Shown: positions 3,665 through 42,074 of the stretch, one piece after another
How positions within the stretch are numbered: position 1 is the first letter of the stretch
How the letters are laid out: each line of letters begins with the position of its first letter
The notes under the pieces: model-generated
The model's database searches: none
Told to the model about the DNA's origin: nothing
The model's input: the letters and a program-made list of their open reading frames with translations, nothing else
Translations under genes and position numbers: made by a program
Assembly: GCF_006345805.1 (NCBI RefSeq)
Contig: NC_043004.1
Coordinates: 7,750,001-7,814,000 of the forward strand
Source: Octopus sinensis
Taxonomy: Eukaryota
DNA length: 64,000 nt
Direction of reading: 5' to 3'

Positions 3665-4103
3665 TAATAATAATAATAATGAAATTATTGTATACAGTGC
3701 TCAGGTACAACACAACTTGTCAAAAGTGCATATAAAGCATATGCAGTAATGTACAAATGTCTGGGAAGTGAACAGTGTATGAGTCAGATACATGCTTGTG
3801 TGTGTATGGAGGGGAGAAGATCAGGTGTAGTATTGGCAAATCTCAGGAAGCATGGAAGTTTTGAAGGATGCAGTGCTCTGACGACTAACAACTGATGTCG
3901 GCAGTTTGTTCCATGCTTCAGCAACTCTTAGTGTGAAAAAATGGTTTCCGAAAGTCATGGGAGCTGTGCTGTTTTCTGACTTTGTAAACATGTCCACGGG
4001 TGTTAGACAGATGGAGTTTGAAAAGGTGCTCAGAGTTATTGTTTGTAAGATAGTTAATAATTTTATGGGTGTCTGCCAAGTCAGCTGCCAGACGTTGGAG
4101 TTT

Positions 4104-4105
<2 letters not shown>
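3665..4105 (-). mobile_element. CR1/L2-type LINE 3' fragment
   Basis: [16 protein letters not shown]...[13 protein letters not shown]; near-identical copy at about 42075-42570 and a partial one at about 48545-48750. Confidence 0.8.
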
Positions 4106-4175
<70 letters not shown>

Positions 4176-4185
4176 GTGTGTGTAT

Positions 4186-4223
<38 letters not shown>

Positions 4224-4302
4224 GTATATATATATGTATGTATATATATATGTATGTATATATATATGTATGTATATATACATGTATATATATATGTATG
4301 TA

Positions 4303-4335
<33 letters not shown>
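4106..4335. repeat. (TA)n/(TATG)n microsatellite
   Basis: Direct; explains the YI-repeat ORFs. Confidence 0.97.
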
Positions 4336-4336
<1 letters not shown>

Positions 4337-4501
4337 AAAGAGTAAGTATCACACTTCAAACAAACAAACCCAAGTACTGGGTTTGATTTATTTGATTAAA
4401 AACCCTTCCAGGCAGTAATCCAAAAGACAATTAGGAAAACCAGAAATGTAATTGTAGCATAGGAAAAAGTAATATAAAATTGTTATTAGGTTAATATTTA
4501 C

Positions 4502-6719: not shown

Positions 6720-7730
6720 ATCGTCGTCATCATCGTTTAATGTCTGCTTTCCATGCTGGCATGGGTTGGACGGTTTGACTGAAGACTGGTGAGCCAGGAG
6801 GCCACACCAGGCTCCAATCTGATCTGGCAGAGTTTCTACAGCTGGATGCCCTTCCTAATGCCAACCACTCCAAGAGTGTAGTGGGTGCTTTTTATATTCC
6901 ACCAGCACAGGAGCCAGCAAGGCGGGCCTGGCAATGATCACATTCGGACAGTGCTTTTTATGTGCTACCGGCACAGGGAGCCAGTTAGGATGGTGAGTGC
7001 TGGCATTGACCATGTTCAGATAGTGCTTTTTACGTTCCACTAGCACAGGGACCAGTCAGGCGGCACTGGCAACAACCCATGCATAAATAGTGCTTATTGC
7101 ATGCTACCAGCACGGGGAACCAGTCAGGTGGCATTTCCATTTTTTATTTTGATTTGATTGAGATTGTGATTTTGATTTTTGATTTTACTTGACTCAATGG
7201 GTCTCTTCAAGCACAGTGTGTCACCCAATGATTCAAAGGTACCTTTTAAATGGGCTGGTTATGTGACACTGGTATAGGCTACAGCTGTGATCTCACTATA
7301 CTTGTCAGGTCTTCTCAATCACAGCATATCTCCAAAGGTCTCGGTCTTTTGTCATTGCCTCTGTGAGGCCCAAAGTCTGATGGTCGTGCTTCACCACCTC
7401 ATCTCGTGTCTTCCTGGGTCTCCCTCTTCTACTGTTAGAGAAGGACACTTCTTCACACAGCTCTCCTCATCCATATGCAACACATGACCATACCAGCGCA
7501 GTTGTCTCTCCTGCACACCACATCTTATATCCAACATTTCTCGCAGGGCACTTATACTCTGTTGTGAGTGCACACTGACATTACACATCCAGCGGATCAT
7601 GCTAGCTTCATATCTTTCAAACCTACGCATCTCTTCAGCAATCATGTTTCACTGCTGTGTAGCATGGCAGTATGCACACATGCATCATACAGTCTACTTT
7701 TCGCTCTGAGTGAGAGGCCCTTTGTCACTA
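6720..7730 (-). mobile_element. RTE LINE 3' fragment (ORF end plus 3'UTR)
   Basis: Minus-strand ORF ..ERYEASMIRWMCNV..LRWYGHV..; (cat)n terminus at about 6720. Confidence 0.8.
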
Positions 7731-13619: not shown

Positions 13620-14085
13620 CTCAACAAGAGTCCAGAAGCTGGCTACCCGCATGGTTCTTGGTCTCAAGCATTTGTCTTATCAAGAAAGGCTGAAGACGCT
13701 CGACCTTTATTCTCTAGAAAAACGACGATGCCGTGGTGATCTCATTCTTGCTCACAACATCATAAGCAGAAAGTGTAACCTCTCGAAAGAGCTGTTTTTC
13801 ACTCTTGCTCCAGAATGTCGGCTGCGGGGTCACTCCGAAAAGCTCTATCTGCGACGATTTCATCTCAATCGAAGGAGAGGGGCTTTCTCCATCTGGGTTG
13901 CGGATCCGTGGAATAAGCTGCCGGACGAGATAGTGAAGATGCTGAAGACCACTCGGTTCAAAGTCTCCCTTGACCACAAATGGCCTGAACTCTTTGCATG
14001 AACACCACCCTGTACATAACTCCATGTCCCCCTACATGACCTTGCTTTTTGCTTTTTGAGCCAAAAAATTAACTTAACTTAATTA
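13620..14085 (+). mobile_element. CR1 LINE 3' fragment
   Basis: LSYQERLKTLDLYSLEKRRCRGDLI...RLRGHSEKL...WNKLP is the typical CR1 RT C-terminus. Confidence 0.88.
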
Positions 14086-18124: not shown

Positions 18125-20650
18125 GAGCCAGTGAGGTGGCACTGGCAACGACTATGCTTGAATGGTGCTTTTTATGTGCCACTAGCATGAGACCAGTCAG
18201 ACGGCACAGGCACCGACCACATTCGTATGGAGCATTTTATGTGCCACTGGCACGGATGCCAGTCTGCTGGGACTGACATTGCCACGCTCAAATGGTGCTT
18301 TTTATGTACCAGTCAAACGTCGCTGGCATCAGCCACAACAATGATTTCACTTGACTCAACAGGTCTTCTCAAGCACAGTATATTGCCCAATGATTGAAGG
18401 ACACTCTTAAAGGGGCTGATTATGCGACACTGGCATAGGTCACGGTTACGGTCTCATTTGGCTCGCTGAGTCTTCTTAAGCACAGCATATCTCTAAAGGT
18501 CTCAGTCACTTGTCATTGCCTCTGTGAGGCCCAACGTTTGAAGGTCGTGCTTCACCACCTCATTCCAGGTCTTCCTGGGTCTACCTCTTCCACAAGTTCC
18601 CTGTACTGCTAGGGTGTGACACTTTTTCACACAGCTGTCCTCATCCATATGCAACACATGATCATACCAGTGCAGTCATCTCTCTTGAACACCACATCTG
18701 ATGCTTCTTATGTCCAAGGTGCTTACAATTTGTTGTATATGCACACTAACATTACACACATCCAGCGGAGTATACTACCTTCATTTCTTGCAAGCTTACA
18801 CATGTTTTCAGCAGTCACGGCCCATGTTTCACTACAGTGTAGTAGGGCTGTTCATACACATGTATCATACAGTCTACCTTTCAGTCTGAGCAAGAGCCCC
18901 TTTGTTACCAGCAGAGGTAGCAGCTCTTTGAACCCAGGCTATTCTTACTCTAATAGCTATGACTAGATAACGGAAACTATCAACTACTTCTAGTTTTTCT
19001 CCCTGGAATGTGATGGAAGCTGTTTTCTGCATATTTTCAGTGTTTATTGCCCCTGTGCATTGCCACACACAAACATTATCTTCCCAGTTAGCCATTCTTT
19101 GATATTGCTGCACCTCTTATGTGTCCATAGCTTACATCAGGTACATCTTATGGAGTTTCTACCTACACCTTTTCTACAGATCGAGCTAGGCTATCCACCT
19201 GTAGGGATTTGTGGTTTGTCTGCCTTCCTACTTATTAAGACTTTGGTTTTTGCTAGATTGACTCTAAGGCCCTTCAATTCTAGACCTTGCTTCCACACCC
19301 TAAATTTCTTCTCTAATTCTGATAGTGATTCAGCTATTAGAGCAAGGTCATCAACATATAGGAGATACCAGGGGCATCTCATCTTGAATTCCTCTGTTAT
19401 TGCCTGGAAGACTATGATGAATAAGAGGGGCTTGAGCACTGATCCTTGGTGAATTTCTACTTGTACCCTGAAATCTTCACTATACTCGTTGCTGAGCCTC
19501 ACTTTACTGACAGCATCCCTGTACCTGACATGTACAGCTCTCACTAACCACTCATATATCCCTAGTTTCTAGATTGTCCACAAGATAAGGGATCAGGGGA
19601 CCCTGTCAAAAGCTTTCTCCATGTCAACAAAAGCCAAGTACAGGGGTTTATCTTTGGTTAGGTATTTCTCCTGCAGCTATCTTACCAGAAATATTGACAT
19701 CAGTGGTGCTTCTCCCTGGCACAAACCCAAATTGCATCTTGTCTAAACTAACTCTCTCCCTAATTAGTTGGGCTATGACCCTCTTTATGACTTTTATCAC
19801 CTGATCTAACAATTTGACACCTCTGAAATTATTTGTATCTAGGGCGTCACCTTTACCTTTGTAGCAGTTGACTATGGTGCTGCTACACCAGTCATTGGGT
19901 GTGACTGCTTCATGTATCACCTGATTGACTATACAGGTGACTAGACAATAGCCGACACTGCCAGATATTTTAAGCATCTCTGCAGTGATTCCTGATGGGC
20001 CAGGGGCTTTCCTTGTCTTCACACCTTTAATTGCTTTATCTACCAAGGTACTGTCAATTTGAATAGCTGGTCCCTCTGTTGGGTTGACATTTGGCAGGCT
20101 CTCTTTCTCCCATTCATTCTCTTCCTTTAGCAACCTTTCATAGTGGCGTCTCCAGGTCTTTCTCCTAGCAGCCTCATTTAACGCAAGTGAGCCGTCATCC
20201 ATGCAGACACATTTCTCTCCTATGACATCTTGATTCTCTGTCACACACTGTCTTGCAACACAAAACACCTCAAGTCTTTGGCCCTCGCGATGCAGAACAC
20301 TGGGAAAATATTTTCTTATCTGCCTCCCCTCTTGCTAAGTAAACCTATCTCTCCTAGCTTCTCTTCTGGCAATCTGACACAGTTCCCTGCTACCACTGTT
20401 CTTCCAGTCCTTCCATGCTTGTTTCTTTTCTCTAATGGCCCTGTCAACTACATTGTTCCACCACCATGTTACCTTAGACCAAGATGGGACTTTGCACCAT
20501 CCCCAGATCTGGTCAGAAGCCCTCAACAGGTTGTCCCATAGGAACCTCCAGTTGTTTTCCACATTATGTGATGCTATGTCCTCCTTTTTTTCATCAAAAG
20601 CTTCAAGTAACACGTCTCTAAATCTCTGTCCATTCACAGGAAATTTGTAA
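18125..20650 (-). mobile_element. Degraded 5'-truncated RTE-clade LINE with reverse transcriptase
   Basis: KAPGPSGITAEML, NNFRGVKLL, QFGFVPGRSTTD, IHQGSVLKPLLF and LLYVDDL spread over several frames; continues into the family 3'UTR. Confidence 0.92.
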
Positions 20651-21308
20651 ACACTACTAAATTTACTGCAACTTGATTAAGTTTTCAATTCACCAGGGCT
20701 AATTATAATGTTTGGACTAGTTACTAGCATCTAAAGTGTTTTGCAGTAAACAGATCTTCCCATACTTTAAACTCTTCTCCTAACAAGCTGCTCCCTTGGG
20801 TTTCACAACCTTGCAAGCTGCATGGCGACCTTACTAGTGTCAGTGGCATGAAAAAAAGCATTCAGCACATACTGTAAAGTGACTGCCATTAGTAAGGGCA
20901 TCCAGCCATTGAAACCCTGGAGTACAAGGCCGTGTTTGAGCCCAGTGAAGTCAGTTAAACCATCCAACCCATGCCAGCTTGGAACATGGACATTAAATGA
21001 CGACGATGATGATGATGTTTGGTAATCACAGCTGCAAACACAAAGTTACTAATTAAGTCAGTAAGGGAATCTTCACATGGTCACTTAACCTGCAAAAAAT
21101 AGCAGCCAAATCTCTCTCTCTCTCTCTCTCTAGCTTAATCAGGAGGAAGGACTCACAACCAGCTGTTTTAAAAGGATAAGCATACATGTTGGATAATTAG
21201 TTTTACATACACAATCATGTCTAAAACACAACAGGATAGCCATCTTTGATCAGAGCCAATCAAAGACTAATTAACAACAACAACAACAACAACAACCAAT
21301 TTACTCAC

Positions 21309-22924
21309 GTGTGGAGAACGTATTCGTACGCTTGATTCACTTCTTCACGTTCTTCTTGTTCTTCCTCTTCCAGGTTTTTAAATTTGAGAGGTTTCATCGT
21401 TTCCAAAGGATTCCATACCACTTTCTGTTTTTGTTTTTTCTTTTTTTTATTAGTTTTGCTGCCAATTTTATTTGATGTCAAAGACTGAGTTTCCTGTTCA
21501 TTTCTGGCTTCAATTCCATTCTCTGAACTTCTCAACCATTTTCTAAATTCTTCTTTGTCAAATGAAAGAGCTGGAGGAAGCGAAGGCTCTTTGTCTTTTG
21601 ACAGAGATGAAGAATCACTCTTTTTCTTTCTTTTCTTCTTTTCTAAGTGACTTCTGGAACTCTGAAAAGTCAGTTTCTTGGAGGTTTCTTTTAGACTGGA
21701 AGCAAACTGGACTGAATGGTTATCTGTAGTTGTATTAGTTAAAGGATAATACTTCTGTTCCAAAAGCCACAAAGCAAGAACCAACAACTGAGGCTGGACA
21801 ATGGCATGCATGGCAGAATCTCCATCTTTTTGTTCCTCTTCAAGTTGAGAAATGAGAATATGGTTCTTTTTAGCCCACATAATCAGCCAATCAACCAACT
21901 GGTTCAGTTTCAAATACTGAGAACCAAAATCAATATCAAATGACCACAGAATATTTTGTTTGTCTGAAATACTATCCAAAGATTTTGATCTGTTACTCCG
22001 TGGCATCGTCGTTTCTCTACATCTGTCCTGCCTCCTTTTAGCTTGGCTCCACAACTGTCTTTTCTCAACTGCAGTCATTTGACTAACAGGACTTGTAGCA
22101 GAGTAGTGACATGAGGCATCGGCTGAATGACTCCGATTAAAAAGACCTTTGGTTTTTTTAGGAGTTTGTTGATTAACTGAACCAAAACTTGGATCCAATA
22201 TATTACTGGAATCTTGGAAATTGGTCGCTTCTTTGCATGGCTTTGATAAAATAAGCAGACTCTGTTTAGGATGTCGACCTGTCATTGTTCGAAATGGCAT
22301 GGATTCCATTTGCATGGCAACAATTTCTTCCGTGAATACATCAAGCAATGGGGAGAATGACTTTGATTGTGATCTCTCTTCTTCCAGAAGTTTTGAAAAG
22401 GAAATGTCATAAAACATATCCAAGAATTTACCATATGATTCACATGTTTCAAATGGGAAAGAACCAACATTAATACTATGTTCTGTGGCGGTTTTGGAAT
22501 CAAACATAAACTCACAGTAATTTCCAAAGTAGTTCTTTTTTTTATCCATAGTCTTCTCCACAGAACTGCAATATTCTTGGAAGTATACTGACAAAGACTT
22601 CTCAGATGAAGAACTTCTTCTGATAATGCCACTTTTTTGCTTAATACTTTGGACCTTGATAACTGGAAATGTTTGCCATCGTTTCAACAAAATTTCCAGT
22701 TTTTCTTGAACTTCAGAATCAAGCTGTTCCACATCGTGACAGAAAGTTGCCAGGATTTGAGCTGTATAAACTGAAGGTTCCAATTCTGATAAAACTGAGA
22801 GAAGAACTTTGTAAGACCATTCTTCATCAGCTAAATAATGGCTGAATGGGATGAAATGAACATTCCAGGTAAGACAAACTTCACACAAAGCACACCATTC
22901 TTCATCTTTTAATGTAGATGGTTT
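21309..22924 (-). CDS. CPLANE1: CPLANE1 coding exon 18 (1616 nt)
   Basis: tttaag|KPSTLKDEEW... within ORF 21305..22975; contains YGKFLDMF, LVDWLIMWAK, LALWLLEQ; donor AC|gtgagt; phase 0 to 2. Confidence 0.92.
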
Positions 22925-23984
22925 CTTAAAAAGTAAATAAAATGAATACAGAAAATTATATTTAATGCTTAGCAAACAAAACAGAGTTTTTTTTATTTCT
23001 AAAAAATAAATTAGGGAAAAAAGTAATTTTAATATGTTTAAAGGGAGATTAGCAAGTGTATTCTAGTTTTAGAGAAGGTAGATTCTGTTCCTGCAAGTTG
23101 TAAGAGGCAACTAAAAGGGTTGGCAACACAAAAGGGCATCCAAGAACACAGGCATCCTAGAAGACAGACCCAGTGAAACCAGTTGACCGATGCCGGAATG
23201 GAAAAGTGGACATAAAATGGTGTTGAAGGACAGGGATGCTTAACCCTTTTGCATTTAAACCAGCCCTATTTGGCCCAAATAGTCTTCCAGTTTTATGTTC
23301 AAACTGAACAGATCTGGTCTCTCACACCTATCCTACAATGTCGTTCTAAAAATAAACTATCACATCATCAAAATCTCAAAGTAACAGGTTAACACGAGAT
23401 TAACTCAAAACAATTTGAATAAATAAACATTACATTTAAAAGTAATCTGAATGCAAAGTGGGGTCAAAGGGTGAAACTGGGGGGGAGGTATTAAATGTAC
23501 CGTGGACTGACCAATAGAAGACAGGAAAAAAAGATGGCGGTGCAAGAAAAAGTGGTCTCAGTTTACTTTGCAGCTCTGTGGTTATGTGACACTTTGGATA
23601 AATGTCTTCTGCTCTAAGATTTCACTTGACCAAGCTCATTATTATTGTTTAGGAGACTTTATCCCTTGCCTGGTGCCTTTAATAGGGGTAATGTCTTCAT
23701 TCCCTAAACCAGTGGAGGCTAAAGTCATTGCTGTCCGAGGCTGAAACTCTGTACACATCCATGTAGGCGTGGTTAAGTGACCACAGATCGTTTTGGAACC
23801 ATGTAGCTTTGTATTCCATTCCTTTCTAAATATCCGGAAGCTAATACAGGATGGGGATTATACATGGATAAACCAAAAATAGAATTTCAATGCCCGACAC
23901 TTGGATTGAAATCGCTGCACAAGGGAGGAAACTCTACACTCACTGCTTACTTGAGTAAAAATCTGGTTTAATGAAAAGTACATT

Positions 23985-26093: not shown

Positions 26094-26911
26094 CTATATA
26101 AAATGAAAATGGAAAAAATAGAGAGAATATGGTTAAAAAATTTCCAGCACTTTCTACAATGGATACGTTTTTTTTTTATAATTAAAAGTCATTCTAAGAC
26201 AATCACATCATCAAAATCTCAAAGTAACATGTTAACACAAGATTGACTGGCTCCTGTGCCGATGGCACTCAAAAGGCACTGTTTGAGCATGGTTGTTGCC
26301 AGTGCCACATAAAAAGCACCCATTACACTCTCTGAGTGGTTGGCATTAGGAAGGGCATCAAGCTGTAGAAACCTTACCAGATCAGATTGGAGCCTGGTGC
26401 AGCCTCCTGGCTTGCCAGTCCTCAGTCAAACCGTCCAACCCATGCCAGCATGGAAAGCAGATGTTAAACAATGATGATGATGATGATAATAATCTTCTGT
26501 CACCAATACTTTTTGGGTAAAATTTCGGTGAAAATTTTCGAAAAGTCTTTGGGGAAATTTTCGGCAAAAATTTTTGAGTAAAATTTTCGGTGAAAATATT
26601 CGGTAAATTTCCGAAAAATTTTTGGGGAGAATTTTCAGTGGAACTCTTCGAAAAGTTTTGGGGGAAAATTAACGGCAAAAAGTTTTGGGTAAAATTTCGG
26701 TGAAAATTTTCAAAAAATCTTTGGAGAAAATTAACGGCAAAAAGTTTTGGGTAAAATTTTCGAAAAATTTTTGGTGAAAATTTTCGGTAAATTTTCGAAA
26801 AATTTTTGGGGAGAATTTTCGGCAAAAATTTTCAAAATATTTTTGGGAAAATTTTTGGTGAAAATTTTGGAAAAATTTTTGGGTAAAATTTTTGGGGAAA
26901 ATTTTCGAAAA

Positions 26912-27113
26912 CCCATATAACGAATATGCTCCATATGCTGAAGTCTATAAAAGTCGATATCGTCATAGTTGTTAAGTGTAAGGCAGAATCTGGTGTATCG
27001 GGGATGGTGAGGCATCTTGACTGTAATATTAAACCAGAATTCACTCTATACACAGAAAAAAGCAGCAAGAGCTACATAAAAATCTATTTTTAGCCATAAC
27101 ATCTATTTTTAGC
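26912..27113 (-). mobile_element. Endogenous CRESS-DNA-virus-like ori plus Rep N-terminal fragment, copy 1
   Basis: ATG at 27015: MPHHPRYTRFCLTLNNYDDIDFYRLQHMEHIRYMGF; TAATATTAC at 27031-27023; repeated ATCTATTTTTAGC at 27082 and 27101. Confidence 0.75.
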
Positions 27114-27378
27114 TTGGGTAAAATTTTCCACAAATTTTTGGGTAAAATTTTCGTAAAATTTTTGTGGAAAATTTTCGTAAAAGTTTTGGGTAAAATTTCG
27201 GTGAAAATTTTCGAAAAATCTTTGAGGAAAATTTTCGGCAAAAATTTTTGGCTAAAATTTTCGGTGAAAATTTTCGGTAAATTTTCGAAAAATTTTTGGG
27301 AAAAATTTTTGGGTAGAATTTTCGGTGAAAATTTTGGAAAAATTTTTGGGTAAAATTTTCGGTGAAAATTTTCGAAAA

Positions 27379-27581
27379 CCCATATAACGAATATGCTCCA
27401 TATGCTGAAGTCTATAAAAGTCGATATCGTCATAAGTTGTTAAGTGTAAAGCAGAATCTGGTGTATCGGGTATGGTGAGGCATCTTGACTGTAATATTAA
27501 ACCAGAATTCACTCTATACACAGAAAGCAGCAGCAAGAGCTACATAAAAATCTATTTTTAGCCATAACATCTATTTTTAGC
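27379..27581 (-). mobile_element. CRESS-like ori/Rep fragment, copy 2 (frameshifted)
   Basis: ATG at 27483: MPHHTRYTRFCFTLNNL* (+1 insertion); nonamer at 27499-27491. Confidence 0.75.
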
Positions 27582-27858
27582 TCGGATAAAATTTTTCGAA
27601 AAATTTTTTGGTACAATTTTCAGTGGAACTCTTCGAAAAGTTTTTGTGGAAAATTTTCGTAAAAGTTTTGGGTAAAATTTCGGTGAAAATTTTCGAAAAA
27701 TCTTTGGGGAAAATTTTCGGCAAAAATTTTTGGCTAAAATTTTCGGTAAATTTTCGAAAAATTTTTAGGAAAAATTTTTGGGAAAAATTTTCGGTAAATT
27801 TTCGAAAAATTTTTGGGTAGAATTTTCGGTGAAAATTTTGGGTAAAATTATTCGAAAA

Positions 27859-28148
27859 ATCACAAGGCCAGCAGTGCCAAAATCACAAAGTATAGAAGGC
27901 CAGCGGTGCCAAAATCAAAAAGTATGGAAAGCCAGCGGTGCCAAAATCAAAAAGTATAGAAAGCCAGCGGTGCCAAAATCAAAAAGTATGGAAAGCCAGC
28001 TGTGCCAAAATCAAAAAGTATGGAAGGCCAGCGGTGCCAAAATTAAAAAGTATGGAAGGCCAGCGGTGCCAAAATCAAAAAGTATGGAAGGCCAGCGGTG
28101 CCAAAATCACAAAGTATGGAAGGCCATAATTTGTGATTTTGGCAGCGC
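27859..28148. repeat. 32-bp minisatellite (gaaggccagcggtgccaaaatcaaaaagtatg) x about 8.5, ending in an inverted unit
   Basis: gtgcc recurs every 32 nt from 27874 to 28098; 28130-28148 is the reverse complement of the unit (18/19). Confidence 0.95.
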
Positions 28149-28907
28149 TAAAATTTTTAGGTAAAATTTTTTGGTGCAATTTTCAGTGGAACTCTTCGAA
28201 AAGGTTTTGCGGAAAATTTTCGTAAAATTTTTAGGTAAAATTTCTGTGAAAATTTTCGAAAAATCTTTGGGGAAAATTTTTGGGGAAAGTTTTCTATGAA
28301 AATTCTCGAAAAGTTTTTGGTGAAAATATTTGGTGAAAATTTTCGAAAAATTTTTGGGTAAAATTTTCGGTGAAAACTTTCAAAAGATTTTTGGGTAAAA
28401 TTTTCGAAAAATTTTTGGGGAAAATTTTCGCTAAAATTTTCAGTGAAAACTGGAAAATTTTCCGTGAAAATTTTCGAAAAGTTTTTGGAGAAAACTTTTG
28501 GTGAAAATTTTCGGAAAATTATTTGGTAAAATTTTCAGTGAAACTCTTCCAAAAATTTCTGCGGAAAATTTTCGAAAAATTTTTGGGGAAAATTTTCGTA
28601 AAATTTTTGGTTAAAATTTTCGAAAAATCTTTAGGGAAAATTTTCGAAAAATTTTTTGGTACAATTTTCAGTGGAACTCTTCGAAAAGTTTTTGGAGAAA
28701 ATTTTCGTAAAATTTTTAGGTAAAATTTCTGTGAAAATTTTCGAAAAATCTTTGGGGAAAATTTTCGGCAAAAATTTTTGGTGAAAATTTTCGAAAAATT
28801 TTTGGAGAGAAGTTTCGGCAAAAATTTTCAAAAAATTTTTGGGAAAATTTTCGGTGAAAATTTTGGAAAAATTTTTGGGTAAAATTTTCGGGGAAAATTT
28901 TCGAAAA

Positions 28908-29079
28908 CCCATATGCTGAAGTCTATATCGTTATAGTTGTTAAGTGTAAAGCAGAATCTGGTGTATCGGGGATGGTGAGGCATCTTGACTGTAATATTAA
29001 ACCAGAATTCACTCTATACACAGAAAGCAGCAGCAAGAGCTACATAAAAATCTATTTTTAGCCATAACATCTATTTTTA
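28908..29079 (-). mobile_element. CRESS-like ori/Rep fragment, copy 3 (two internal deletions)
   Basis: ATG at 28983: MPHHPRYTRFCFTLNNYNDIDF...; nonamer at 28999-28991; 10 and 18 nt deletions. Confidence 0.72.
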
Positions 29080-29556
29080 TTTCGGGTAAAATTTTCGAAA
29101 AATTTTTGGTACAATTTTCGAAAACTTTTTGCGTAAAATTTTCGAAAAATTTTTGAAAAATTTTTGGGTAAAATTTTCGGTGAAAACTTTCGAAAAATTT
29201 TCACCAAATATTTTCACCAAAAACTTTTAGAAAATTTTCATGGAAAACTTTCCCCAAAAATTTTTGGAAAATTTTCGCCGAAAATTTTCCCCAAAACTTT
29301 TCCCAAAAATTTCACCAAAAATTTTCAAAAAATTTCACCGAAAATTTTCCACAAAAATTTTTCGAAAATTTTAAACAAAAATGTTTAGAAAATTTTCGCT
29401 GATAATTTTCCCCGAAAATTTTCCCAAAAATTTTTCCAAAATTTTCATCGAAATTGGTACAATTTTCAGTGTCATTACCTGAAGCGTTCTCATGTCAAAG
29501 TAATTAAGAAATATAAAAATAATTTATAGGGTTAAATGACAGGTAACTAAACTTAC

Positions 29557-29736
29557 TCCAAATTTATTTGCAGATCTCTTGGAGACTGTCATCAGTTGCT
29601 GAATATACCATTGTGCCAATGGCAGAGACAATTTGGCTCCTTGAAGAACAATCAGTATAAGACGTATCAAAACTGAAGTCTTATGTCTCAGTTCCTTCTC
29701 TTGGATTAAAGCAGCAGACTTTATTGCTGAATCATT
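29557..29736 (-). CDS. CPLANE1: CPLANE1 coding exon 16
   Basis: tcctag|NDSAIKSAALIQEKELRHKTSVLIRLILIVLQGAKLSLPLAQWYIQQL...KFG|gtaagt; 180 nt, phase 0 to 0; missed by the ORF track. Confidence 0.9.
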
Positions 29737-38589: not shown

Positions 38590-39730
38590 GTTATGAAGAT
38601 CATGGAGAGAGCCATAGCACAATTGATACGTGACGGTACATCTCGATGAGATGCAGTCTGGAAAAAGTGCCTTGGATGCAATCTTCCTAGTGAGGCAAAT
38701 ACAGGAGAAATACTTGGCTAAGCGTAAACCACTATTCCTGGCCTTCATTGACCTGCAGAAGGCATTTGACAGAGAACCACATACAATAATCTGGTGGACA
38801 CTTAAGAAACTAGGGGTTGATGCACCAGCTGAGCACAAAAACGCAGGAAGTGAAGTGAGAGTTAACAATGATTTCAGAGACAAATTAAGCGTGAAGGTAG
38901 GAGTTCACATCAAAGTTCAGTTCTCAGTCCTCTGCTGGTCATCCAAAATGCTAATGATCTGATTCTCATTGCTGAATCTATAGTGCAATTATAGAAGAAG
39001 AAATTCTGAACGCGGAAGCTAAGCTTAGAACCAAAAGGTCTTAAGGTAAACTTAACAAAAGCGGAGGTTTTAATAAGAAGACAGGGCTTGGCCCTCTCAT
39101 ATCTTCCATTGATGCCGACTGTTTCTTCTTCACTATATCCGCAAGGATTATGTACAAATTCCATATACTGCATCCAATGAAAGCAATGGACACAAAAGGT
39201 GTAGTGAAACCACAAGCAGTCTATCTGAGAATGCAAACTTCAAATGTGGTAGGTGCGATGGAGCAATTCATACTTTGAACACACCATAAATAGAATCTCC
39301 TCTACGTCCAGATGACTCATTAGAAGTAGTTGAGAGTTTTGTTACCAAGATAATGAAAATTAGCAGGGGAGGTGGTTGTTCTGAAAGTAAAGCAGCCAGA
39401 GTAAGAATGGGCTGTAGAAAGTTCAGGGAGCTACTACCACCACTGGCTATAAAGGGCTTTTACCCCTCAGAGTGAAGAGCAAATTATATGAAACTTGTGC
39501 TAGAACTGCAATGCTGCATGGTAGCGAGACATGAACCTTGAATGCAGAGGACTTGAGAAGACTGGAAAGAAATGAAGCTAGCACTGGACATGTAATGTAA
39601 GTGTGCTTGACAGACATGGCACAAAAAAGTACTGAGAGGAAAATGGGGCACGAAGGGAAATCAGATGTAGAGTACAAGTGACCAGACAGTATCAGTTTGG
39701 ACATATAGTTGAGGACAGCTGTACAATGAA
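38590..39730 (+). mobile_element. Degraded RTE LINE RT fragment (antisense to host gene)
   Basis: DAIFLVRQIQEKYLAKRKPLFLAFIDLQKAFDR. Confidence 0.85.
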
Positions 39731-40288: not shown

Positions 40289-41719
40289 CTAAGATTAAAA
40301 AAAAGAAAAAAAAAGAAAAATTTTTAGGCTAAAACTGCTGAAGAATTTAATCAATTACTATTGAATCTATATTATAATTATAGTATAGACTTTAGCGTAT
40401 TTAGGAACACCCTATACAGTAGAATTAGTATGCTGTACAATATGTACAGCATACTACATAAAATCTTGTCAAGAAAGAAATATGAAATTATCTAATATTA
40501 AAGTTTTTCTCTCAAAGGCATTAACAACATAAATGAAGTGAAACAGCTTGAACTAGGACAGAAAACAGCCTTAGGTGTGGTTTCATCTAGAGTTTACATT
40601 ACAACTGAAACCACTAAACAGAACACACACACACACACCATGATCATGATCAGTTAACATCTGTTTTCCATGCTGGTATGAATTGGATGGGTTGACAAGA
40701 GCTGGCAAGTCAGAAGACTGTACCAAGCTCTACTGTCTACACACACACATGCATAATGTGTACACAGTAGCATCACAGGCAGATGAAAAGGGGAGTTCGT
40801 ATAGAGAAGAGACAGAGCAATAGTCAAGAATATGAGTATCCAAAACCTGAGGTGGCTATTTAAGAGTAACTGACAGTTTCTCAGTGACCCAAACAGCAAT
40901 GGTGCAAGGTTCTGTGTAACCATAGTAACCAGAGTAAATACAGAGAGGGAAATGTTCAAGGAACTATTTGCATTGGTTCACTATAAAGGAATTCTCTTTG
41001 AGCGAAGGGTAGTTTGTATGAGGCTTGTGTTGGAAATGAGATGCTGCAACGTCGCCTTACTGGCATCTGTGCCATGTATAAAAAGATTCGAGTGAGGTCA
41101 TTGCCAGTACTGCCTGACTGGCCCCCGTGTCGGTGACATGTAAAAAGCACCCACTACACTCTCAGAGTGGTTGGCGTTAGGAAGAGCATCCAGCTGTAGA
41201 AACCATGCCAAATCAGATTGGAGCCTGGTGCGGCCGTCTGGTTTGCCAGCCCTCAGTCAAAATCGTCCAACCCATGCTAGCATGGAAAGTGGACGTTAAA
41301 CGATGATGATGATGATGTGTAAAAGAGAATGGAGTTTGGTGCGGTCCTCTGGATCACTAGTCCTGTTGGAGCATCCGACCCATGCCAGCATGGAAAACAG
41401 ATGTTTAATGATGATGATGAAGATGATGCATGGAGGCTGACTAGAAATACAGCAAACATTCTGCACTTGGTGTTTAATGCTGATGGGTATGAGAATGATG
41501 CAATGAGGTCAAGGAAAAAAAATAGCAGACAGCTTCAATGGCCATGGGAAAAAAAACTGAGCTAATATAGAACATGTGGTGCACATGAAGGATAAGAGGA
41601 AGGGTGACAAGTGGCAGGCAATCCAGCCAAAAGAATTGGAAGAACAAGGAATACGCGAGAAGAACTGCTAAGGAAGACCTGCCTAATCTATGGATACACA
41701 GGGAAAAAATGGACTGCTG

Positions 41720-41795
41720 CTGCTGCTGATGGTGATGATGATGATGATGGTGATGATGGTGGTGATGATGTTGGTGATGATGATGGTGGTGATGA
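41720..41795. repeat. (GAT/GGT)n microsatellite
   Basis: Direct; source of the poly-His ORF. Confidence 0.9.
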
Positions 41796-42074
41796 ATTCC
41801 TGAAAACAAATGGACTGAAGATTGCAGACTGTAATTGAAGTGAAGACACTCCAGAGTGGCTTAACATCAGGCTTTATCTGGAGCTAAACAAATAATTGTT
41901 ATGTAGATCTTCTCACGAGGCTTATTTAAAACCATAAAGATTTAAACATGTTTATGAAGGATGCAGTGAAGAGTTTGCAATAAGACAGAACCAACAAATG
42001 GACCAGCACCTTATTGACTCTTCAAGCTGCAGATCCTGGCAAAATAAGAGACTCTAAAAATATATATTATAATA

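What the first reader, a model, noticed from the sequence alone, without database searches (positions are those of the whole stretch)
26510..29471. Candidate system: satellite array carrying repeated ssDNA-virus replication origins inside a host intron
Seen: a self-complementary satellite brackets three copies of a CRESS-like ori plus Rep start, sense to the CPLANE1 pre-mRNA, beginning about 85 nt from the exon-16 donor. Known: CRESS Reps nick NANTATT^AC origins, can act in trans, and drive rolling-circle replication; endogenous viral elements can yield small RNAs in animals. Inference, two non-exclusive models: (a) a non-autonomous rolling-circle element or satellite amplified or mobilised by a viral or endogenous Rep; (b) a host-transcribed dsRNA-forming cassette that turns viral sequence into small RNAs. 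I know of no described octopod element like this, but could not search.
Basis: partly seen in the sequence, partly recalled or inferred. Interest (0 to 1): 0.9.

Follow-up and report, generated by a model that had tools for sequence, protein, structure and literature searches.

The report
Circovirus-like gene fossil repeated in satellite
An intron of this animal gene holds three near-identical copies of a 207-base fossil of a small circular-DNA virus (its replication-gene start and a remnant of its replication origin), multiplied along with an AT-rich satellite repeat; it looks like a dead relic and not a working replicating element.

Summary
The array at 26510-29471 is real. It is an AT-rich, self-complementary 12/24/37-bp satellite with three 98%-identical copies of a ~207-bp unit and a 32-bp minisatellite.

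On the minus strand, which is also the host gene's strand, each unit starts a reading frame. Its first 36 codons are homologous to the N-terminus of CRESS/circovirus-type Rep. The whole-library phmmer E-values are 4e-9 and 1e-7 to two broken Rep genes. One of those is Pfam Viral_Rep and matches solved circovirus Rep nuclease domains.

A nonamer lies 7 nt before the ATG on the Rep strand. Free relatives carry theirs in the same orientation, but inside a 9-12-bp stem. Here only 3 bp can pair, and folding is no better than shuffles.

Everything after codon 36 is missing from the whole window: motifs II and III, the helicase and the capsid gene. All three copies share the same junctions with the satellite, and the nonamer is interior to the unit.

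Best reading: one fossil fragment of an endogenous circovirus-like element, co-amplified with the satellite by ordinary tandem-repeat dynamics. The transcript can form a long hairpin (z = -15). Small RNAs, genome-wide copy number and the gene name could not be tested.

The parts
26510..29471 (.). Whole composite array: AT-rich satellite (29.7% G+C against 38.5% for the window), three virus-derived units and one 32-bp minisatellite
26510..26907 (+). Satellite block A (G>C orientation). Its last ~300 nt align in register with blocks B and C and with the end of block D
26908..27015 (-). Rep gene fragment, copy 1. The first 36 codons (MPHHPRYTRFCLTLNNY...) are open, then the frame runs into satellite. 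It is truncated: Rep motif I only, with no motif II, motif III or helicase
27016..27114 (-). Non-coding upstream part of unit copy 1. It holds the nonamer TAATATTAC at 27023-27031 (Rep strand) without a closing stem, and two 13-nt direct repeats at 27082-27094 and 27101-27113
27115..27375 (+). Satellite block B. With unit copy 1 it forms a 468-bp higher-order repeat
27376..27483 (-). Rep gene fragment, copy 2. It is broken by one frameshift followed by two in-frame stops, and truncated like copy 1
27484..27582 (-). Upstream part of unit copy 2, with the nonamer at 27491-27499
27583..27863 (+). Satellite block C (84.5% identical to block B, 87% to 28637-28901)
27864..28149 (+). 32-bp minisatellite: 8.2 copies at 94% identity (27864-28126), with a short inverted copy at 28124-28149. 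It occupies the slot where the next unit would be expected. No match in any viral locus
28150..28904 (+). Satellite block D, about 1.5 higher-order repeats of satellite without a unit
28905..28983 (-). Rep gene fragment, copy 3. It is broken by two deletions totalling 28 nt, one of which shifts the frame, and truncated like copy 1
28984..29079 (-). Upstream part of unit copy 3, with the nonamer at 28991-28999
29080..29195 (+). Satellite block E (forward orientation)
29196..29447 (-). Inverted satellite block F (C>G). In the transcript it pairs with 28640-28900, so unit copy 3 sits between the arms of a long imperfect hairpin
29448..29471 (+). Short terminal piece in forward orientation. It carries the recurrent GGTACAATTTTCAGTG motif of the array
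29557..29640 (-). Neighbour: candidate host exon on the minus strand. Its donor GT is at 29556/29555, 85 nt from the array. The exon bounds are inferred from the open frame and splice signals only
26230..26495 (+). Neighbour: SINE-like dispersed host repeat that abuts the array, with more than 30 copies in the window

Best explanation
The ~207-bp unit is a dead fragment of an endogenous circovirus-like (CRESS-DNA) element. It comprises about 99 nt of the region upstream of Rep, including a decayed remnant of the origin loop, plus the first 36 codons of Rep.

One such fragment came to lie inside an AT-rich intronic satellite. It was then copied to three places together with its flanking satellite, by ordinary tandem-repeat dynamics (unequal crossing-over or replication slippage producing a ~470-bp higher-order repeat).

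It encodes no functional protein and has no origin hairpin, so it most likely neither replicates nor moves. Its only present-day property is that the host pre-mRNA carries it inside a long, imperfect A/U-rich hairpin.

**Shown:** viral ancestry, truncation, copy structure, loss of the stem, hairpin potential. **Inferred:** the order of events and the recombination mechanism.
For: **Homology to Rep**
- The 36-aa peptide finds two proteins among 1.84 billion representatives: P0002 (E 4.4e-9, 76% identity) and P0003 (E 9.9e-8, 57% identity).
- P0003 is Pfam Viral_Rep at E 1.7e-9, 38.3 bits against a cutoff of 26.
- P0003 matches solved circovirus Rep nuclease domains (2hw0, 5xor, 6wdz, 7lar) at E 3e-6 to 5e-5.
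- At DNA level the coding part aligns to L001 over 106 nt with score 87, against a shuffle maximum of 27.
- A free IMG/VR relative (L008) hits all three copies by tblastn, at E 1e-6 to 3e-4.

**Truncation**
- No other Rep or capsid similarity exists anywhere in the 64 kb.

**Origin remnant without a stem**
- In 11 of 26 IMG/VR relatives the nonamer lies on the Rep strand, 15-48 nt before the ATG, closed by a perfect 9-12-bp stem.
- In the window it lies 7 nt before the ATG with a 3-bp stem and fold z-scores of +0.2 to +1.2.
- The region around the nonamer aligns to the origin regions of L008, L013 and L010 better than all but 1, 3 and 7 of 300 shuffles respectively; by eye, the bases just either side of the nonamer match the inner stem ends there.

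**Single capture followed by duplication**
- All three copies have identical junctions with the satellite.
- Unit plus satellite forms a 468-bp repeat.
- Satellite blocks align in register at 80-87%.
- The units are about 98% identical.

**Host context**
- The array sits between a dispersed SINE-like repeat and an exon of a conserved minus-strand gene.
Against: - Genome-wide copy number, orthologous loci and read support could not be examined. The satellite might therefore always travel with the unit, which would favour a mobile or replicon-derived module.
- What is retained is exactly the origin-proximal piece: the upstream region plus the Rep 5' end. From my own knowledge, not checked here, this is also the part kept by sub-genomic defective DNAs of circular ssDNA viruses and by the tobacco geminivirus-related repeats. 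A replicon-derived multimer is therefore not excluded.
- The upstream 99 nt shows no significant similarity to the upstream regions of the two closest relatives, L001 and L002. Their origin hairpins lie about 90 nt upstream in the opposite orientation.
- The 98% identity between copies means the amplification is recent.
Confidence: 0.7

Rival explanations
1. Replicon-derived module. The ~468-bp repeat (origin remnant, Rep 5' end and AT-rich filler) is an integrated multimer of a sub-genomic defective or satellite-like circle of a circovirus-like virus, or a non-autonomous rolling-circle element once amplified by a Rep supplied in trans.
For: - The retained part is the origin-proximal region, with the nonamer on the Rep strand next to the Rep start, as in free relatives.
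- The arrangement is tandem, with a 468-bp period.
- Tandemly repeated endogenous geminivirus sequences with partial rep genes and an origin loop are documented in yam and tobacco (PMC5014472, PMC7758297).
- Broken but longer relatives exist in sequencing runs of an unidentified large genome.
Against: - There is no stem around the nonamer in any copy, and this state predates the duplication.
- The nonamer is interior to the unit, so no junction lies at it.
- Satellite-only stretches exist at both ends and in the middle of the array: 26510-26907, 28150-28904 and 29080-29471.
- The satellite has no match in any viral locus held.
- No Rep gene lies in the window.
Confidence: 0.12
2. Host-exploited hairpin locus. 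The intronic array is transcribed with the gene, folds into long dsRNA and is processed into small RNAs, or heavily edited. This gives the host sequence-specific material against related viruses.
For: - The unit is in the sense orientation of the host gene, 85 nt from a donor.
- RNA of 28640-29471 (minus strand) folds at -267 kcal/mol against -158 +/- 7 for shuffles, z = -15. Unit copy 3 lies between the arms.
- siRNAs map to tandem endogenous geminivirus repeats in yam (PMC5014472).
Against: - The paired arms are satellite, not viral sequence. The viral unit lies in the unpaired interior, so dsRNA-derived small RNAs would mostly be satellite.
- Only ~207 nt of virus is present.
- No expression, small-RNA or editing data could be consulted.
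- Any inverted AT-rich satellite would fold like this.
Confidence: 0.1
3. Assembly artefact or contaminant: viral reads wrongly joined into a host scaffold, or an array mis-expanded by the assembler.
For: Satellite arrays are error-prone in assemblies, and no reads could be checked here.
Against: - The three copies differ by substitutions and indels, as true paralogues do.
- The unit is a truncated, decayed fragment with satellite on both sides, and it lies between a host SINE-like repeat and a host exon.
- No free virus with this sequence was found in IMG/VR or in JGI metagenomes.
Confidence: 0.05
4. Chance resemblance: the unit has no viral ancestry.
For: - Pfam and PDB searches with the 36-aa peptide alone found nothing.
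- The nonamer as a bare word is at chance frequency.
Against: - Whole-library E-values of 4e-9 and 1e-7 to proteins, one of which is itself a significant Viral_Rep member.
- DNA-level alignment far above shuffles.
Confidence: 0.02

Closest known systems
Endogenous circovirus-like / CRESS-DNA Rep elements (CVe) in animal genomes, including molluscs (PMC6069186)
   Same: It is Rep-derived sequence of the Viral_Rep family, fixed inside host DNA, truncated and broken, and flanked by host repeats and a host exon.
   Different: - Only the first 36 codons plus the upstream region survive.
- It is multiplied within a satellite higher-order repeat.
- PMC6069186 lists bivalves and gastropods but does not mention octopus.
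Geminivirus-related DNA (GRD) of Nicotiana and EGV1 of yam: tandemly repeated endogenous geminiviral sequences (PMC5014472, PMC7758297)
   Same: These are tandem copies of a circular-ssDNA-virus fragment. EGV1 includes partial rep genes and an intergenic region with the origin nonamer. siRNAs map to EGV1.
   Different: - The hosts are plants and the viruses are geminiviruses.
- The yam repeat is 2.6 kb and keeps a GC-rich stem around the nonamer. Here the stem is lost.
- Here the repeat is ~470 bp, more than half of it non-viral satellite.
Uncultivated CRESS-DNA viruses in IMG/VR (2.0-2.3-kb contigs; best L008, IMGVR_UViG_3300020044_011983)
   Same: - The Rep N-terminus is similar: 58-62% identity over about 30 aa for copies 1 and 3 (81% over the 16 aa aligned in copy 2), tblastn E 1e-6 to 3e-4.
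- The nonamer is on the Rep strand shortly before the ATG.
   Different: - They have an intact nuclease domain and a perfect 9-12-bp stem.
- The nonamer lies 15-48 nt from the ATG, against 7 nt in the window.
Broken Rep copies in Logan contigs of runs SRR11869385, -390, -391 and -394 (L001, L002, L038-L040; organism not identified)
   Same: - These are the closest relatives: 76% and 57% aa identity, with the coding DNA aligning over 106 nt far above shuffles.
- They are also degraded. In L001 the nuclease-domain similarity is split over two frames, with stops in every frame downstream. In L002 a premature stop follows 104 codons.
   Different: - They keep Rep motif III and, in L001, decayed helicase-region sequence, which I read by eye from the DNA and did not test.
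- Their origin hairpin lies about 90 nt upstream in the opposite orientation.
- No satellite is seen in the pieces read.
Helitrons (eukaryotic rolling-circle transposons with a HUH Rep)
   Same: They are eukaryotic genomic elements that depend on a HUH nuclease, so they are a conceivable frame for 'non-autonomous rolling-circle element'.
   Different: The peptide's relatives are Viral_Rep (circovirus-type) proteins, not Helitron Rep/Hel. No Helitron-type termini were looked for or seen, and membership was not tested further.

Membership tests
CRESS-DNA virus Rep (Pfam PF02407 Viral_Rep), as a derived sequence | N-terminal motif I region homologous to family members | tested here: met
   - phmmer E 4.4e-9 and 9.9e-8 to P0002 and P0003.
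- P0003 is Viral_Rep at 38.3 bits against a cutoff of 26 and hits circovirus Rep structures.
- The peptide alone does not reach Pfam.
CRESS-DNA virus Rep (Pfam PF02407 Viral_Rep), as a derived sequence | Motif II (metal-binding His motif) and motif III (catalytic Tyr) | tested here: not met
   The frame runs into satellite after codon 36. tblastn with ten Rep relatives finds no further Rep similarity in the 64 kb.
CRESS-DNA virus Rep (Pfam PF02407 Viral_Rep), as a derived sequence | SF3 helicase domain | tested here: inconclusive
   The unit ends at codon 36, so none can lie within it. The queries were mostly nuclease-domain pieces, so only weak coverage of the helicase region was searched. 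Nothing was found.
CRESS-type replication origin | Conserved nonamer in the region upstream of Rep | tested here: met
   - TAATATTAC lies on the Rep strand 7 nt before each ATG.
- It differs at one position from the TAGTATTAC of 11 IMG/VR relatives, which carry it on the same strand.
CRESS-type replication origin | Nonamer presented in the loop of a stable stem | tested here: not met
   The stem is 3 bp, and fold z-scores are +0.2 to +1.2. Relatives have perfect 9-12-bp stems. L001 folds at z = -2.2.
CRESS-type replication origin | Short direct repeats (iterons) next to the stem | tested here: inconclusive
   Two 13-nt direct repeats lie at 27082-27094 and 27101-27113, but they are 51-90 nt from the nonamer, not adjacent to it. 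They were not compared across relatives.
Endogenous viral element | Virus-derived sequence contiguous with host DNA on both sides | tested here: met
   A SINE-like host repeat lies on one side. On the other side is a candidate exon (bounds inferred from frame and splice signals only) of a minus-strand gene whose large exon at 21305-22975 is conserved.
Endogenous viral element | Germ-line fixation: same insertion in other individuals or related species | not testable with these tools
   No host assemblies or reads are reachable. The host's own proteins are not in the protein collections.
Satellite DNA with higher-order repeat | Head-to-tail monomers, plus a longer period in which blocks align in register | tested here: met
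   TRF periods are 12-61 nt plus 468 nt. Satellite blocks are 80-87% identical in register.
Non-autonomous rolling-circle element or satellite replicon | Element ends or repeat junctions at the origin nick site, with an intact origin | tested here: not met
   The nonamer is interior to the unit, all junctions are unit-to-satellite, and the stem is absent.
Non-autonomous rolling-circle element or satellite replicon | Multiple dispersed copies, and a Rep source in the same genome | not testable with these tools
   There are none elsewhere in this window.
Hairpin small-RNA or dsRNA locus | Long inverted repeat within a transcribed region | tested here: met
   Arms of about 250 nt are 70-83% complementary. 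RNA fold z = -15. Transcription is inferred from the intronic position only.
Hairpin small-RNA or dsRNA locus | Small RNAs or editing clusters that map to it | not testable with these tools
   No expression data are available.

The most novel reading that the evidence does not exclude
The ~470-bp module is the chromosomal trace of a multimeric sub-genomic circle of a cephalopod circovirus-like virus, an animal counterpart of the tandem endogenous geminivirus repeats of tobacco and yam. The host now transcribes it, inside an intronic hairpin, into RNA that feeds small-RNA or editing pathways directed at related viruses.
Probability: 0.08. Interest if true: 0.7.

Novelty: new member of a known kind. 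Interest (0 to 1): 0.4.

Why it matters
It would add a cephalopod to the animals known to carry circovirus-like fossils. No such cephalopod element turned up in the paper searches. The survey in PMC6069186 lists bivalves and gastropods and does not mention octopus.

It also shows a viral fragment being carried along and multiplied by satellite dynamics inside an intron. This is a route by which virus-derived sequence can gain copy number without any viral activity.

Finally, it gives a dated marker. The copies are about 98% identical, so comparing the same intron across octopods could time both a past infection and the growth of the satellite. Beyond that it is an ordinary fossil.

Tried and rejected
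**Searches with the short peptide that found nothing**
- Pfam (E up to 10) and PDB sequence search.
- Word-indexed protein search: no candidate.
- IMG/VR scan with copy 1's own peptides: none confirmed.

**Other look-ups that led nowhere**
- Exact look-up of eight ORFs from the units: none is in the collection.
- JGI metagenome scan with family patterns: none.
- Rfam at a permissive threshold gave only sub-threshold miRNA-like hairpin hits caused by the palindromic satellite. There were no tRNAs.
- P0004 and P0005 from the phmmer search are repeat-driven junk.

**Gene identity and host of the relatives**
- Pfam on five large minus-strand ORFs and on the homologues P0001 and P0016 gave no family. 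CPLANE1 therefore remains untested.
- The run accessions of the closest relatives are not mentioned in any held paper, so their host stays unknown.

**Rejected readings**
- A stem hidden in a wider context: 41-121-nt folds on both strands are no better than shuffles.
- Significant homology between the unit's upstream 99 nt and the upstream regions of L001 and L002, in either orientation: not found.
- The 32-bp minisatellite or the satellite being viral: no match in any viral locus.
- A target-site duplication flanking the array: none seen by eye.
Full report
**1. What is in the sequence**

Positions 26510-29471 form one composite tandem array. Tandem Repeats Finder reports overlapping periods of 12, 13, 24, 37 and 61 nt, plus a 468-nt period.

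The array is 29.7% G+C, against 38.5% for the window. All 25 copies in the window of the 10-nt palindrome TTTTCGAAAA lie inside it, so the satellite is self-complementary at monomer level.

From about 29196 to 29447 the satellite is inverted. G/C skew reverses there, and inverted-repeat arms of up to 266 nt are 70-83% complementary to the forward blocks.

Three features interrupt the satellite:
- Three copies of a ~203-207-bp unit, at 26909-27114, 27376-27582 and 28905-29079. They are 97.7-98.8% identical over aligned bases. Copy 3 is shorter by two deletions totalling 28 nt.
- A 32-bp minisatellite of 8.2 copies at 27864-28126.

Neither the unit, the satellite nor the minisatellite occurs elsewhere in the 64 kb.

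**2. Host context**

The long conserved open frames of the window are on the minus strand. One of them (21305-22975) has a 42%-identical homologue covering 90% of it, at E 6e-103.

On the minus strand a GT donor sits at 29556/29555, directly after a short open exon-like stretch.

On the other side the array abuts a SINE-like repeat (26230-26495) that has more than 30 copies in the window. The array is thus embedded in ordinary host DNA.

I could not test the gene name or the exon number. No Pfam family was found for the exons or their homologues, and the host's own proteins are not in the collections.

**3. The Rep start is real**

Read on the minus strand, each unit has an ATG (27015, 27483, 28983) that opens MPHHPRYTRFC[L/F]TLNNY....

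The 36-aa peptide alone is too short for Pfam or the PDB sequence search. An exhaustive phmmer scan of 1.84 billion representative proteins found two true relatives:
- P0002: E 4.4e-9, 76% identity over 34 aa.
- P0003: E 9.9e-8, 57% identity over 35 aa.

P0003 is a significant member of Pfam Viral_Rep (PF02407; E 1.7e-9, 38.3 bits, cutoff 26). It also matches solved circovirus Rep nuclease domains (2hw0, 5xor, 6wdz, 7lar) at E 3e-6 to 5e-5.

At DNA level the coding part of the unit aligns with the P0002 locus (L001) over 106 nt. The score is 87, against a maximum of 27 in 500 shuffles. This homology runs to the very edge of the unit, where the satellite begins.

Thirty uncultivated CRESS-virus contigs in IMG/VR (2.0-2.3 kb) are more distant relatives. 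The best, L008, hits all three window copies by tblastn at E 1e-6 to 3e-4.

The unit therefore carries the first 36 codons of a circovirus-type Rep gene, which is motif I only. Nothing after that is present anywhere in the window: no motif II, no motif III and no capsid similarity.

The state of the three copies is:
- Copy 1 is open but truncated.
- Copy 2 has one frameshift followed by two in-frame stops.
- Copy 3 has two deletions, one of which shifts the frame.

**4. The origin: nonamer yes, hairpin no**

The window's nonamer TAATATTAC occurs only in the three units. That is one independent occurrence against 0.73 expected by chance, so as a bare word it means nothing. Its place is what matters: on the Rep strand, 7 nt before a genuine Rep ATG.

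In 11 of 26 IMG/VR relatives a nonamer differing at one position lies on the Rep strand 15-48 nt before the ATG, in a loop closed by a perfect 9-12-bp stem.

The window's region around the nonamer aligns to the origin regions of L008, L013 and L010 better than all but 1, 3 and 7 of 300 shuffles respectively. By eye, the bases just either side of the nonamer match the inner ends of those stems. This is borderline after allowing for eleven comparisons. I read it as a plausible decayed origin loop.

The stem is gone, however. Only 3 bp can pair, and every fold of 41-121 nt on either strand is no better than shuffles (z +0.2 to +1.2). The three copies are identical here, so the loss predates their duplication.

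One result cuts the other way. The two closest relatives (L001, L002) have their origin hairpin about 90 nt upstream in the opposite orientation. The unit's upstream 99 nt has no significant similarity to their upstream regions.

Two 13-nt direct repeats (27082-27094, 27101-27113) are iteron-like in form but lie 51-90 nt from the nonamer. I leave these as inconclusive.

**5. How the three copies arose**

All three copies join the satellite at the same bases on both sides. Unit plus about 265 nt of satellite forms a 468-bp repeat. The satellite blocks before and after the units align in register at 80-87%.

There are also satellite-only stretches at both ends and in the middle of the array. The 32-bp minisatellite sits where a further unit would be expected.

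The nonamer is interior to the unit, so no junction lies at it.

This pattern is what one capture followed by segmental tandem duplication gives. It is not what independent insertions, or initiation and termination at an origin, would give.

**6. Hairpin potential**

The pre-mRNA-sense RNA of 28640-29471 folds at -267 kcal/mol, against -158 +/- 7 for shuffles (z = -15). The inverted block pairs with the forward satellite on the other side of unit copy 3.

The paired arms are satellite, and the viral unit lies in the interior.

**7. Relatives elsewhere**

The closest relatives come from Logan assemblies of runs SRR11869385, -390, -391 and -394, on contigs of 0.9-1.8 kb.
- Both diverged types occur in one run (SRR11869390).
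- The P0003 type recurs in four runs.
- In three of those runs the contig ends 26 nt after the gene.

Both types are degraded. In L001 the nuclease-domain similarity is split over two frames, with stops in all frames downstream. In L002 a premature stop follows 104 codons, and motif II is not conserved in the alignment to solved structures.

This looks like fixed paralogous fossils in a large genome. I could not identify the organism. No closer free virus was found in IMG/VR or in JGI metagenomes.

**8. Comparison with what is known**

Circovirus-like and CRESS Rep fossils are known in many invertebrate genomes, including bivalves and gastropods. The survey in PMC6069186 does not mention octopus.

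Tandemly repeated endogenous geminivirus sequences are documented in tobacco and yam. The yam EGV1 repeat includes partial rep genes and an origin loop in a GC-rich stem, and siRNAs map to it (PMC5014472; PMC7758297).

The present case is the same kind of thing in an animal, but much smaller and without the stem. More than half of each repeat is non-viral satellite. I therefore file it as a new member of a known kind (an endogenous CRESS/circovirus-like element) with an unusual satellite setting.

It is not a member of any class of working origin or rolling-circle element. The defining stem-loop and the nick-site junctions were tested and not met.

**9. Verdict**

| Reading | Confidence |
|---|---|
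| Passive fossil co-amplified with a satellite | 0.7 |
| Replicon-derived multimer or Rep-driven module | 0.12 |
| Host-exploited hairpin locus | 0.10 |
| Assembly artefact or contaminant | 0.05 |
| Chance resemblance | 0.02 |

Interest is 0.4. The evidence points to a relic, not to a system.

Noticed in passing
26230-26495 and more than 30 other places in the window: A SINE-like dispersed repeat of about 190-270 nt with an (ATG)n/AT-rich tail, on both strands, 70-90% identical between copies. Its translations account for many of the spurious ORFs in the window.
   Followed up: partly
27864-28149: A 32-bp minisatellite (8.2 copies, 94% identical) ends in a short inverted copy that makes a small hairpin. 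It occupies the slot of a unit in the ~470-bp higher-order repeat. Its origin is unknown, and it has no match in the viral loci.
   Followed up: partly
19191-20268 (-), 7391-7645 (-), 13651-14001 (+), 38630-38962 (+): ORFs that look by eye like fragments of LINE-type reverse transcriptase genes inserted in the introns. Two of them (19648-20268 and 13651-14001) gave no Pfam family at E <= 0.01; the others were not searched.
   Followed up: partly
3906-4386 and 41474-41809: Long TA/CA-type microsatellite, and a CAT/CAC repeat that gives a His/Gln-rich ORF.
   Followed up: no
L001, L002, L038-L040 (Logan runs SRR11869385, -390, -391, -394): Two diverged, broken circovirus-like Rep copies co-occur in the same sequencing run, and the P0003 type recurs across four runs. 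In three of those runs the contig ends 26 nt after the gene. They look like fixed fossils of an unidentified large genome. Upstream of each lies an arginine-rich stretch on the opposite strand that could be a decayed capsid gene start; I read this by eye only.
   Followed up: partly
L007 (Logan run ERR11443730): A more distant Rep relative (P0006) with an intact nuclease domain lies next to an HMG-box gene fragment on a 2.4-kb contig. This suggests another endogenous copy in a different eukaryote.
   Followed up: no
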